A DNA stretch of 63,829 nt, filler included, from Octopus bimaculoides (taxonomy: Eukaryota), in the NCBI RefSeq assembly GCF_001194135.2. It is 6 parts of 6 records of this genome, joined end to end, with 100 filler letters (N's around TTAATTAATTAA, not from the genome) between each part and the next. Parts side by side here need not be neighbours in the genome. Positions count along the whole stretch, not along the records: positions 61,560 to 63,829 come from NC_068983.1; 5 more parts are not named here. One strand, written 5' to 3'. This document shows, in pieces, positions 61,560 to 63,479 of the stretch. The position numbers were made by a program, and so were the translations under genes. Position 1 is the first letter of the stretch; each line of letters begins with the position of its first letter. The notes under the pieces were generated by a model that made no database searches, was not told the origin of the DNA, and worked only from the letters and a program-made list of their open reading frames with translations.

Positions 61560-63479
61560 CTTCACTACTGACAGGCACACTTCGGGTAGCCCCGGGTACC
61601 GGCAGAGCCCCTTCTCGCTAATGGGCTCGACGTTCGTCACGTTTCAAGTCGGAACGCTTGTCACGAATTTGCTTCAGCGTCTTGTCCGGAAGTAGGGGGA
61701 CCACTGCCACAGCGATACTTTTGCACCCGGCCTCCAGCAGCTCCTTTTCCTTTTCTAGGAGGATTGCCACTTCCTCCTTTGTCCAACAACCCCGCGACGT
61801 ACGCCCCGTCGTCCGCGCGAGTTGTGCACGCTTTTCGCGCTTGCGTGCTATTTCGTCCCTGCGACGTTCTATCCTGTGCTTGTTCGCCTGCACAGGATGC
61901 TTGTGCCGTAAGTGTTGTGACAGGCCTACAGCCCGGCGGAAGGCCTGGCTGCACTCGTCACACTAATAAGGTGGCTGCTGGGGGTCCGGTGCCGCAGGAC
62001 CAGTGTTCCCCGGACACTTGGCGACGTGACATCTGACCGAGTGAAGGTGGCCGCTCTCATGGCCACAGCGTATGCATTTGTACGCAGGCTTACGGTTATG
62101 CCTGTTGAGTACGTGTAACCCCCATTCGATGGGGCTAGAGAAGTGTCTAGGACAGAGCGGGCATAACAGGGAGATCGACGCACATGGAATCTCTACGGTG
62201 AACGCATCGACCGACGGTTGGTTGGCCACGTCACCATCACCAGCATCCCCGGCGGGCGATCCGTNNNNNNNNNNNNNNNNNNNNNNNNNNNNNNNNNNNN
62301 NNNNNNNNNNNNNNNNNNNNNNNNNNNNNNNNNNNNNNNNNNNNNNNNNNNNNNNNNNNNNNNNNNNNNNNNNNNNNNNNNNNNNNNNNNNNNNNNNNNN
62401 NNNNNNNNNNNNNNNNNNNNNNNNNNNNNNNNNNNNNNNNNNNNNNNNNNNNNNNNNNNNNNNNNNNNNNNNNNNNNNNNNNNNNNNNNNNNNNNNNNNN
62501 NNNNNNNNNNNNNNNNNNNNNNNNNNNNNNNNNNNNNNNNNNNNNNNNNNNNNNNNNNNNNNNNNNNNNNNNNNNNNNNNNNNNNNNNNNNNNNNNNNNN
62601 NNNNNNNNNNNNNNNNNNNNNNNNNNNNNNNNNNNNNNNNNNNNNNNNNNNNNNNNNNNNNNNNNNNNNNNNNNNNNNNNNNNNNNNNNNNNNNNNNNNN
62701 NNNNNNNNNNNNNNNNNNNNNNNNNNNNNNNNNNNNNNNNNNNNNNNNNNNNNNNNNNNNNNNNNNNNNNNNNNNNNNNNNNNNNNNNNNNNNNNNNNNN
62801 NNNNNNNNNNNNNNNNNNNNNNNNNNNNNNNNNNNNNNNNNNNNNNNNNNNNNNNNNNNNNNNNNNNNNNNNNNNNNNNNNNNNNNNNNNNNNNNNNNNN
62901 NNNNNNNNNNNNNNNNNNNNNNNNNNNNNNNNNNNNNNNNNNNNNNNNNNNNNNNNNNNNNNNNNNNNNNNNNNNNNNNNNNNNNNNNNNNNNNNNNNNN
63001 NNNNNNNNNNNNNNNNNNNNNNNNNNNNNNNNNNNNNNNNNNNNNNNNNNNNNNNNNNNNNNNNNNNNNNNNNNNNNNNNNNNNNNNNNNNNNNNNNNNN
63101 NNNNNNNNNNNNNNNNNNNNNNNNNNNNNNNNNNNNNNNNNNNNNNNNNNNNNNNNNNNNNNNNNNNNNNNNNNNNNNNNNNNNNNNNNNNNNNNNNNNN
63201 NNNNNGAAACCAAGCGAAGGCACCAGATGACATACCGGCAACAGCAACACGCCCAGTCGGAAGAACGACCCGCCACACGTACAGGAAGGGAGGAAGCCGC
63301 ACCCCGTCCTTTGTATCGCCCCAGAATCAGCGAAGTCTCCCACCGTATCGGATCTGCCAGGGAGATTGGGTCGTTTTTGGTTTGTCCAATGCGATGCGAC
63401 AAATTCGGGATGGTTGAACCTCGCCCGACATAGCCAGCATCACGAACGTAAGCTCTCTTGCCACGACAAGGCAACGACC
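61560..63479 (-). mobile_element. R2 non-LTR retrotransposon (R2-A-type), 5' UTR and N-terminal ORF; RT and endonuclease not in the window
   Basis: One continuous frame from 62264 leftwards: CCHH finger (62098-62163), CCHC finger (62014-62076), TAG, CCHH finger CDECSQAFRRAVGLSQHLRHKH (61897-61962), Myb-like WTKEE...LPDKTLKQIRDKR (~61640-61785). HDV-like fold at 63369-63479. Internal N gap 62265-63205. Confidence 0.85.
63369..63479 (-). ncRNA. HDV-like ribozyme fold at R2 5' end (P1 5' strand missing)
   Basis: P2 GGUCGUU/AACGACC; P3 GCC/GGC around L3 UUGUCGU; P1 3' strand AAGAGAGCU; long P4 hairpin; J4/2 C-A-A-A with candidate catalytic C at 63379. Confidence 0.7.

What the first reader, a model, noticed from the sequence alone, without database searches (positions are those of the whole stretch)
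61560..62264. Hidden R2-A architecture: three zinc fingers plus Myb split across two predicted ORFs by a single TAG
Seen: the ORF-track entries ending at 61963 and starting at 61893 are the same reading frame. Translating through the TAG at 61963-61965 reveals a third finger, Y*CDECSQAFRRAVGLSQHLRHKHP, giving CCHH-CCHC-CCHH-Myb. Established: this three-finger arrangement marks the R2-A lineage, including rDNA-specific R2/R8/R9-type elements. Non-rDNA R2 families have been reported in some invertebrates. Inference: a cephalopod R2-A family, possibly poorly described. The frame is otherwise unbroken, suggesting a fairly recent insertion and possibly an active master in rDNA.
Basis: partly seen in the sequence, partly recalled or inferred. 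Interest (0 to 1): 0.7.

Follow-up and report, generated by a model that had tools for sequence, protein, structure and literature searches.

The report
Dead octopus R2 retrotransposon copy
This is the front end of a broken copy of an R2 jumping gene of a kind already described in octopuses; the only unusual thing about it is that it sits next to another jumping gene instead of in its normal ribosomal RNA gene target.

Summary
On the minus strand, one frame from 62262 down to 61621 encodes CCHH, CCHC and CCHH zinc fingers plus a Myb motif, interrupted by a TAG at 61963-61965.

The R2 lineage-A call holds. The best solved-structure matches are the three-finger R2 proteins of zebra finch and big-headed turtle, by sequence and by fold.

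The family is not new. A 2026 Genome Biology survey (PMC13188248) lists 28S-inserted three-finger R2s from four octopods. The window peptide is 73% identical, without gaps, to R2-1_OVu of Octopus vulgaris.

The stretch beyond the N gap (63478 down to 63207) matches the R2-1_OVu 5' end from its first base, at 81% over about 200 nt. Both sides of the gap therefore belong to one element, and its 5' boundary lies at 63478.

Directly upstream there is no 28S rDNA. Instead there is the antisense of a decayed, unrelated YMDD-type LINE reverse transcriptase fragment (63479-63829).

Best reading: a dead, 5'-complete copy of a known octopod R2 whose 5' end lies outside its 28S target. Low novelty and low interest.

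The parts
61560..63478 (-). 5' part (about 1.9 kb as scaffolded, including a 942-N gap) of one degenerate lineage-A R2 retrotransposon copy. The 5' end is at 63478 and the element runs off the piece at 61560.
   Evidence: Both sides of the gap match R2-1_OVu in the same order and orientation.
63207..63478 (-). R2 5' end / 5' leader. It is homologous to R2-1_OVu from that element's nt 1 (147/182 = 81% over the first ~200 columns, one 17-nt indel). Similarity is lost after about nt 200.
63453..63472 (-). Conserved block GCC-UUGUCGU-GGC-AAGAGAG (R2 nt 7-26), read as P3/L3/P1' of an HDV-like 5' ribozyme. AAGAGAG is complementary to 28S CUCUCUU at -11..-5 of the R2 site. In this copy that 28S partner is replaced by LINE sequence, so only 4 of 7 P1 pairs are possible.
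   Evidence: The block is conserved from scallop to octopus. The first pair of P3 is G-C, C-G or G-U and A-U in L003. The P1/P1' logic follows PMC3774820. The ribozyme itself is inferred, and Rfam gave no hit.
62265..63206 (.). Assembly gap (942 N) inside the element. Comparison with R2-1_OVu predicts about 450 nt here.
62098..62163 (-). ZnF3, CCHH (CPLCPRHFSSPIEWGLHVLNRH).
62014..62076 (-). ZnF2, CCHC (CIRCGHESGHLHSVRCHVAKC).
61963..61965 (-). In-frame TAG no. 1, one codon before the first Cys of ZnF1. R2-1_OVu has Lys at this position.
61897..61962 (-). ZnF1, CCHH (CDECSQAFRRAVGLSQHLRHKH).
61654..61785 (-). Myb motif (WTKEEVAILLEKEKELLEAGCKSIAVAVVPLLPDKTLKQIRDKR).
   Evidence: It aligns to the Myb of R2Tg and R2Pm. 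W160 is nearly invariant (at least 90%) and Q198 is nearly invariant among relatives.
61618..61620 (-). Relatives read through this position.
61560..61617 (-). The same frame continues after TAG no. 2 (REGALPVPGATRSVPVSSE), weakly similar to the linker of R2-1_OVu/OSi. It is cut by the piece edge.
63479..63829 (+). Flank, not part of R2: a fragment of a different non-LTR reverse transcriptase (motifs around GIFQ.D.LSPLLF and YMDD). RT homology starts at 63483. It has a 1-nt frameshift near 63728 and an in-frame TAA at 63800-63802.

Best explanation
The piece holds the first part of a dead copy of an octopod lineage-A (three-zinc-finger) R2 non-LTR retrotransposon on the minus strand.

Anatomy, 5' to 3':
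- a 5' leader that begins at 63478 and carries the conserved ribozyme-like block;
- an assembly gap;
- the N-terminal DNA-binding module ZnF3(CCHH)-ZnF2(CCHC)-ZnF1(CCHH)-Myb.

The RT, zinc knuckle and restriction-like endonuclease would lie beyond 61560.

How the family works (established for relatives, inferred here): the single ORF protein uses ZnF1-Myb, helped by ZnF3-ZnF2, to bind the 28S rDNA target. It nicks the DNA and copies its own RNA in by target-primed reverse transcription. The RNA is released from the 28S co-transcript by a 5' HDV-like ribozyme whose P1 stem uses 28S sequence.

This particular copy cannot do any of that. Two TAG codons break the ORF (61963-61965 and 61618-61620). 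Its 5' end abuts the antisense of a decayed LINE RT instead of 28S, which removes both the rRNA promoter context and the 28S strand of the ribozyme P1.

The most likely history is an off-target, 5'-complete retrotransposition of an rDNA-resident R2 into a pre-existing LINE copy, followed by neutral decay. Shown: identity of the element, its 5' boundary, the two stops, and the non-28S 5' flank. Inferred: the direction of insertion, the ribozyme, and the presence of the rest of the element.
For: Sequence:
- PDB phmmer best hits are R2Tg 9dou_A (E 1.6e-17), 9nl3_A and 9nl2_A, each aligned across all three fingers and Myb.
- An exhaustive search found 912 relatives. The closest are Octopus vulgaris and Argonauta hians proteins, one of them annotated as an R2 pol.
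- Full-length relatives have ZnF/Myb, then RVT_1, then a C-terminal CCHC/RLE-like tail, and gave no N-terminal endonuclease-domain hit in Pfam.
- The window peptide is 73% identical, gap-free, to the published 28S-inserted R2-1_OVu. It is 45-49% identical to the other octopod relatives compared.

Structure: the AF2 model has mean pLDDT 92.3. The top three Foldseek hits are the R2Tg and R2Pm cryo-EM structures, probability 1.0.

5' end: the window minus strand matches R2-1_OVu from nt 1 at 63478.

Flank:
- No rRNA match anywhere in the piece at E up to 10.
- LINE RT homology at 55-58% identity starts at 63483 on the opposite strand.
- R2-type RTs match that fragment at only 30-42% identity and about 30-35 bits.

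Stops.
Against: - Only one junction is visible, because the 3' end and RT/RLE lie outside the piece. R2-into-LINE cannot be told apart from a 5'-truncated LINE landing at the R2/28S junction, a rearrangement, or a chimeric contig.
- If the family's RNA keeps 11 nt of 28S at its 5' end, as the P1 model predicts, an ectopic copy might be expected to carry them. It does not. The flank's resemblance to 28S (10/18 matches) is not significant (P about 0.07).
- The scaffold gap (942 N) is about twice the ~450 nt predicted from R2-1_OVu.
- Rfam found no HDV-like ribozyme, and covariation support is thin (one compensatory pair; 83/500 shuffles reach the observed score).
Confidence: 0.9

Rival explanations
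1. The R2 copy was, or still is, in a 28S gene. The non-28S 5' flank would then be secondary: a 5'-truncated LINE inserted at the R2/28S junction, a deletion or rearrangement in a decaying orphan rDNA unit, or a chimeric join of two repeats made by the assembler.
For: All four published octopod R2-1 families are in 28S. An O. vulgaris relative (L003) sits beside an orphan 180-nt 28S fragment on a chromosome, which shows that rDNA/R2 fragments do get dispersed and decay. The contig carrying the junction is short and borders an N gap. The predicted 11-nt 28S leader is absent.
Against: The break would have to fall within 1 nt of the canonical R2 5' end. No 28S remnant is detectable in 351 nt of flank. 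No sequence shared between R2 and the LINE at the junction was noticed that would explain a repeat-mediated chimera (read, not specifically tested).
Confidence: 0.25
2. A live, recently inserted R2 copy whose TAGs are not real stops, because they are sequencing errors, read-through, or A-to-I recoding of UAG to UGG as is common in cephalopods.
For: There are no frameshifts in 234 codons. All 12 zinc ligands and the Myb Trp are intact. Both stops are TAG.
Against: There are two independent stops. Relatives have K, R, E, D or L, never W, at the first stop position. The 5' flank lacks the 28S promoter and ribozyme context. Two TAGs out of two stops is unremarkable.
Confidence: 0.04
3. Not R2: a host C2H2 zinc-finger/Myb gene, or another restriction-like-endonuclease LINE (NeSL, Utopia, HERO, R4).
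For: Pfam alone sees only weak C2H2 hits, below the curated cut-offs. Host ZNF proteins appear lower in the hit lists. Utopia proteins are reported to share a similar finger co-fold (PMC13188248).
Against: 73% gap-free identity to a published 28S-inserted R2, plus homology of the non-coding 5' end from nt 1. The top sequence and fold hits are all R2.
Confidence: 0.01

Closest known systems
R2-1_OVu / R2-1_OSi (Octopus vulgaris / O. sinensis R2, lineage A; PMC13188248, supplementary file 16)
   Same: The same ZnF3-ZnF2-ZnF1-Myb module with identical spacing: 151/208 = 73% identity with no gaps. The same 5' end from nt 1 (81% over about 200 nt), including the GCC-L3-GGC-AAGAGAG block.
   Different: The published elements are flanked by 28S on both sides and were curated as R2 ORFs; their rows as held are cut after about 400 residues, so the rest of each ORF was not read here. 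The window copy has two TAG stops, a 17-nt deletion in the leader, no similarity after about nt 200 of the leader, and a LINE flank instead of 28S at its 5' end. At 73% identity it is either another species' orthologue or an old paralogue.
R2Tg (zebra finch) and R2Pm (big-headed turtle) A-clade R2 proteins, PDB 9dou, 9nl3, 9nl2
   Same: Three fingers plus Myb align end to end (E 1e-14 to 1.6e-17). They are the top three fold matches to the AF2 model.
   Different: Only 27-30% identity. The overall TM-score is low (0.30-0.35) because the modelled free domains are arranged differently from the DNA-bound structures. RT and RLE cannot be compared here.
Non-site-specific R2 families (R2NS-1_SMed, R2NS-1_CSi; PMC5035012) and cockroach R2-like elements (PMC7650587)
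   Same: R2-type elements found outside 28S.
   Different: Those are families that have lost target specificity. Here there is a single copy of a family whose close relatives are 28S-specific, so there is no evidence of a specificity change.
R2Bm (Bombyx mori, clade/lineage D)
   Same: The same overall element type and TPRT mechanism; ZnF1-Myb are homologous.
   Different: R2Bm has one N-terminal finger. The window has three.

Membership tests
R2 clade/lineage A | Three N-terminal zinc fingers, two CCHH and one CCHC, followed by a Myb motif (PMC5035012). | tested here: met
   CCHH 62098-62163, CCHC 62014-62076, CCHH 61897-61962, Myb 61654-61785. The ligands lie in invariant or nearly invariant alignment columns. 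Caveat from PMC13188248: finger number alone does not fix the lineage.
R2 clade/lineage A | Co-folded ZnF3:ZnF2 unit (PMC13188248). | tested here: inconclusive
   The AF2 model gives pLDDT 93-97 continuously across residues 10-60 of the model (ZnF3 into ZnF2), with no low-confidence linker. The best fold hits are R2Tg and R2Pm. Coordinates could not be inspected, so the co-fold itself was not verified.
R2 clade/lineage A | Placement of the RT domain within lineage A in a phylogeny. | not testable with these tools
   The RT lies beyond the piece edge (below 61560). The N-terminal domain is closest to published lineage-A octopod R2s.
R2 (any clade) | A single ORF with RT, a C-terminal CCHC knuckle and a restriction-like endonuclease. 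| not testable with these tools
   These lie outside the piece. Full-length relatives found with this peptide do have that layout.
R2 (any clade) | Insertion at the conserved 28S rDNA site (..CTCTTAAGG | TAGCCAAATGCC..). | tested here: not met
   The 5' flank 63479-63829 is LINE RT antisense, there is no rRNA match at E up to 10, and similarity to 28S is not significant. The 3' junction is unseen. This failure concerns this copy, not the family: R2-1_OVu, OSi, ORu and ECi are all in 28S.
R2 (any clade) | A 5' HDV-like self-cleaving ribozyme. | tested here: inconclusive
   The P3/L3/P1' block is conserved and P1' is complementary to 28S -11..-5. 95% of cells pair, against 37-66% in the slid controls, with one compensatory pair plus an A-U variant in L003. 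P2, P4 and the catalytic C were not resolved, and Rfam found no hit. In this copy only 4 of 7 P1 pairs can form.
Active (autonomous) element | Uninterrupted ORF. | tested here: not met
   TAG at 61963-61965 and TAG at 61618-61620.
NeSL / Utopia / HERO / host ZNF gene | Best sequence and fold matches to those families. | tested here: not met
   All top hits are R2.

The most novel reading that the evidence does not exclude
The copy records a genuine off-target retrotransposition: a 28S-specific, three-finger R2 integrated a 5'-complete copy into another LINE outside rDNA. Together with the dispersed R2 fragments seen in Argonauta and on O. vulgaris chromosomes, this would mean that octopod lineage-A R2s leak out of the rDNA more often than the strict-specificity picture suggests.
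Probability: 0.5. Interest if true: 0.3.

Novelty: new member of a known kind. Interest (0 to 1): 0.2.

Why it matters
It matters little beyond annotation. It shows that two ORF calls and a stretch beyond an assembly gap belong to one degenerate R2 copy, and it fixes that element's 5' boundary at 63478. It also adds one more octopod sequence to a lineage-A R2 group that was catalogued in 2026.

Two points could interest R2 specialists. First, this is a possible ectopic, 5'-complete insertion of a normally 28S-specific A-lineage R2; such proteins are being developed for site-specific transgene insertion, so natural off-target events are of some relevance. Second, the 5' block conserved from scallop to octopus predicts ribozyme cleavage 11 nt upstream in 28S. 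Both points need data outside this piece.

Tried and rejected
- The word-indexed protein search with the read-through peptide found nothing at E <= 0.001. The exhaustive search was needed.
- Pfam sees only sub-threshold C2H2 hits and no Myb in the window peptide.
- Rfam at E <= 10 gave only two chance lncRNA hits: no rRNA, no HDV-like ribozyme, no R2 element RNA.
It is not. It lies on the opposite strand and has YMDD. It is 55-58% identical to non-R2 LINE fragments, but only 30-42% identical (about 30-35 bits) to R2 RTs.
- I tried to assign that LINE to a clade through a relative's locus (L001). This yielded only RVT_1 and a weak zf-RVT hit, so the clade is left open.
- I tested whether the 5' flank mimics the 28S target or carries a decayed 28S leader. 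The best match is 10/18, P about 0.07 by shuffles and by pseudo-junctions, which is not significant.
- An exact-product look-up of the 91-aa window ORF, intended to find the source genome, found nothing on record.
- I tried to complete an HDV-like fold (P2, P4, catalytic C) by eye and could not find a pairing conserved in all species. Only P1 and P3 are reported.
- The idea that the two TAGs are edited or read through was considered and rejected for lack of any support.

Full report
**What is in the piece.** Real sequence is 61560-62264 and 63207-63829, separated by 942 N. On the minus strand, the frame starting at 62262 reads, without frameshift, as follows:
- GSPAG...IPCASISLL-CPLCPRHFSSPIEWGLHVLNRH (CCHH)
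- NRKPAYK-CIRCGHESGHLHSVRCHVAKC (CCHC)
- PGNTGPAAPDPQQPPY-TAG
- CDECSQAFRRAVGLSQHLRHKH (CCHH)
- a basic helix
- WTKEEVAILLEKEKELLEAGCKSIAVAVVPLLPDKTLKQIRDKR (Myb)
- SDLKRDERRAH-TAG-REGALPVPGATRSVPVSSE

This frame has 2 stops in 234 codons, whereas the other five frames have 5-12 each.

**What it is.**
- Against all PDB sequences, the three best hits are R2 proteins with three fingers: R2Tg 9dou_A (E 1.6e-17), 9nl3_A and 9nl2_A. Each aligns continuously from the first finger to the end of Myb. Ordinary C2H2 proteins follow at least eight orders of magnitude behind.
- An exhaustive HMMER search of 1.84 billion representatives gave 912 hits. The closest are Octopus vulgaris and Argonauta hians predicted proteins at 47-50% identity. 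One cluster member is annotated as 'Pol polyprotein from type-2 retrotransposable element R2DM'.
- Full-length hits have ZnF/Myb near residues 100-300 and RVT_1 near 500-900. They also have the R2-type C-terminal CCHC/PD-(D/E)XK tail, and gave no N-terminal endonuclease-domain hit in Pfam.
- In a 36-protein alignment all the Cys/His ligands of the window peptide fall in invariant or nearly invariant columns.
- An AlphaFold2 model built on that alignment is confident (mean pLDDT 92.3). Its only strong Foldseek matches are the zebra finch and big-headed turtle R2 cryo-EM structures (E 2e-8 to 1e-6, probability 1.0).

**It is a known family.**
- Kojima et al. 2016 define R2A by three fingers, two CCHH and one CCHC (PMC5035012).
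- A 2026 survey (PMC13188248) lists four octopod R2s in its supplementary table: R2-1_OVu, R2-1_OSi, R2-1_ORu and R2-1_ECi. All are three-finger and all have 28S flanks. The same table lists one-finger R2s from Sepia and Sepiola.
- The R2-1_OVu N-terminus matches the window at 151/208 residues (73%) without a single gap, E 1e-99. The alignment runs straight through the first TAG, where OVu has Lys.
- The other octopod relatives compared are 45-49% identical to the window. The published octopod R2s are 44-51% identical to one another, so the window element is a close relative of the O. vulgaris/sinensis element.
- The paper also warns that finger number alone does not define lineage. Here, however, the nearest relatives are themselves lineage-A R2s.

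**The other side of the gap.**
- The reverse complement of 63207-63478 aligns with the R2-1_OVu 5' end starting at that element's very first base, which corresponds to window 63478. Identity is 147/182 (81%) over the first ~200 columns, with one 17-nt indel. After that the similarity fades. The 17 nt missing in the window form a small hairpin in OVu; that is my reading.
- Hence 62264 and 63206 do belong to the same element, the scaffold order and orientation are right, and the R2 5' boundary is inside the piece.
- R2-1_OVu predicts about 450 nt for the gap, not 942.

**The flank is not 28S.**
- Upstream of 63478 (coordinates 63479-63829), the published elements have ...GACTCTCTTAAGG of 28S. 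The window instead has the antisense of another retrotransposon's RT.
- On the + strand, from 63483, it reads IRHSMNKWQTVLQLQTKEGLVKTKAIPIRRGIFQEDTLSPLLFCLAL...HLLYMDDLKLYAK. A 1-nt frameshift near 63728 is followed by NDRELETLLQTVHGFTKEIDMKFG-TAA-EKCAKATLQ.
- This fragment is 55-58% identical to many unnamed LINE RT fragments. R2-type RTs match it at only 30-42% identity and about 30-35 bits. In the PDB, R2 and L1 RTs hit it weakly, at E 5e-6 and 1e-2. It is therefore not the R2's own RT.
- Rfam finds no rRNA anywhere in the piece even at E 10.
- The flank's resemblance to the 28S sequence next to the R2 site (10/18 at best) is not significant, P about 0.07.

**A conserved 5' RNA block.**
- R2 nt 7-26 (63453-63472) read GCC-UUGUCGU-GGC-AAGAGAG. 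The same block occurs in O. sinensis, O. rubescens, Eledone, a scallop and a mussel.
- AAGAGAG is invariant and complementary to the invariant 28S CUCUCUU at -11..-5. In octopods that 28S stretch lies 23-24 nt upstream of it. The mussel element carries its own internal CTCTCTT.
- The 3-bp stem GCC/GGC changes to CCC/GGG in Eledone and GCC/GGU in scallop, and to ACC/GGU in a second O. vulgaris family.
- This is the P1-P3-L3-P1' layout that Eickbush et al. describe for R2 HDV-like ribozymes that cleave in upstream 28S sequence. Their examples include a spacing as short as 23 nt and a case that cleaves at -13 (PMC3774820).
- Support is modest. 95% of cells pair, against 37-66% in the slid controls, but there is little variation and 83/500 shuffles reach the observed score. 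I could not resolve P2, P4 or the catalytic C, and Rfam gave no hit. I report it as an inference.
- In the window copy the 28S strand is replaced by LINE sequence, and only 4 of 7 P1 pairs can form.

**Most likely history and mechanism.**
- Family level (established for relatives): R2 is co-transcribed with 28S rRNA and released by its 5' ribozyme. Its protein binds the 28S target, mainly through ZnF1-Myb. ZnF3-ZnF2 bind upstream DNA and aid second-strand events. Integration is by TPRT.
- This copy: it is 5'-complete, has two nonsense codons, and has a non-28S 5' junction within 5 nt of LINE-coding sequence. The simplest account is an off-target retrotransposition into a LINE copy followed by decay (about 0.6 given that it is R2).
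- Alternatives: a LINE landing at the R2/28S junction, decay of an orphan rDNA unit, or a chimeric contig (about 0.25 together). I cannot exclude these because the 3' junction lies outside the piece.
- The absence of the predicted 11-nt 28S leader is a small point against the simple off-target model.

**Context from related loci.**
- The Argonauta relative (L002) is an isolated ZnF-Myb fragment with no 28S within 6 kb.
- An O. vulgaris copy of a second three-finger family (L003, chromosome OX597816.1) follows an orphan 180-nt 28S fragment that ends at ...GACTCTCTT.
- Dispersed, decaying R2 pieces are therefore not rare in octopod assemblies.

**Verdict.**
- Observation: confirmed, apart from the 'otherwise unbroken' claim.
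- Interpretation: R2 lineage A in a cephalopod is right. 'Poorly described', 'recent' and the implied link to the RT-like sequence at 63480+ are not supported.
- Novelty: another, defective member of a family catalogued in 2026.
- Interest: low.

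Noticed in passing
window 63479-63829 (+): A decayed fragment of a different non-LTR retrotransposon RT (GIFQEDTLSPLLF ... YMDDLKLYAK). It has a 1-nt frameshift near 63728 and a TAA at 63800-63802. Its homology begins abruptly at 63483, 5 nt from the R2 5' end. Its clade was not assigned.
   Followed up: partly
window 63453-63472 (-); also L003 6342-6363: The block GCC-L3-GGC-AAGAGAG is conserved at the 5' end of mollusc three-finger R2s, from scallop to octopus. 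AAGAGAG is complementary to 28S CUCUCUU at -11..-5, which predicts an HDV-like ribozyme cleaving 11 nt upstream in 28S. The first pair of P3 varies as G-C, C-G, G-U and A-U.
   Followed up: partly
P0121 (Octopus vulgaris CAI9736399.1, 811 aa): This gene model contains four near-identical repeats of the R2 ZnF1-tail-to-Myb segment (GRSQH.RHKHPVVANARRI...WSDEEVAVLVEKE...). That suggests tandemly amplified partial R2 copies, or a model stitched across several copies, on an 84-Mb chromosome.
   Followed up: no
L003 6062-6240 and 6335-9730 (O. vulgaris OX597816.1, about 107.46 Mb): A copy of a second octopus three-finger R2 family, about 50% identical to the window peptide. It lies behind an orphan 180-nt 28S fragment ending at ...GACTCTCTT, and has a leader of about 140 nt before the conserved P3/P1' block. 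Two more RT-like hits lie nearby (3081-3983, 14086-15063).
   Followed up: partly
L002 6652-7173 (Argonauta hians BAAFZT010000128.1): An isolated R2 ZnF-Myb fragment with no downstream RT and no 28S within 6 kb. It is flanked by two tRNA-like (probably SINE) matches.
   Followed up: partly
window 62265-63206: The scaffold gap is 942 N, but comparison with R2-1_OVu predicts only about 450 nt between the two sequenced parts. Either the gap estimate is off or this copy carries extra sequence.
   Followed up: partly
window 63207-63280 (-): Beyond about nt 200 of the element, where the R2-1_OVu ORF begins (nt 214), the window no longer aligns with OVu (38% identity). The region before the fingers evolves very fast or has been replaced.
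   Followed up: no
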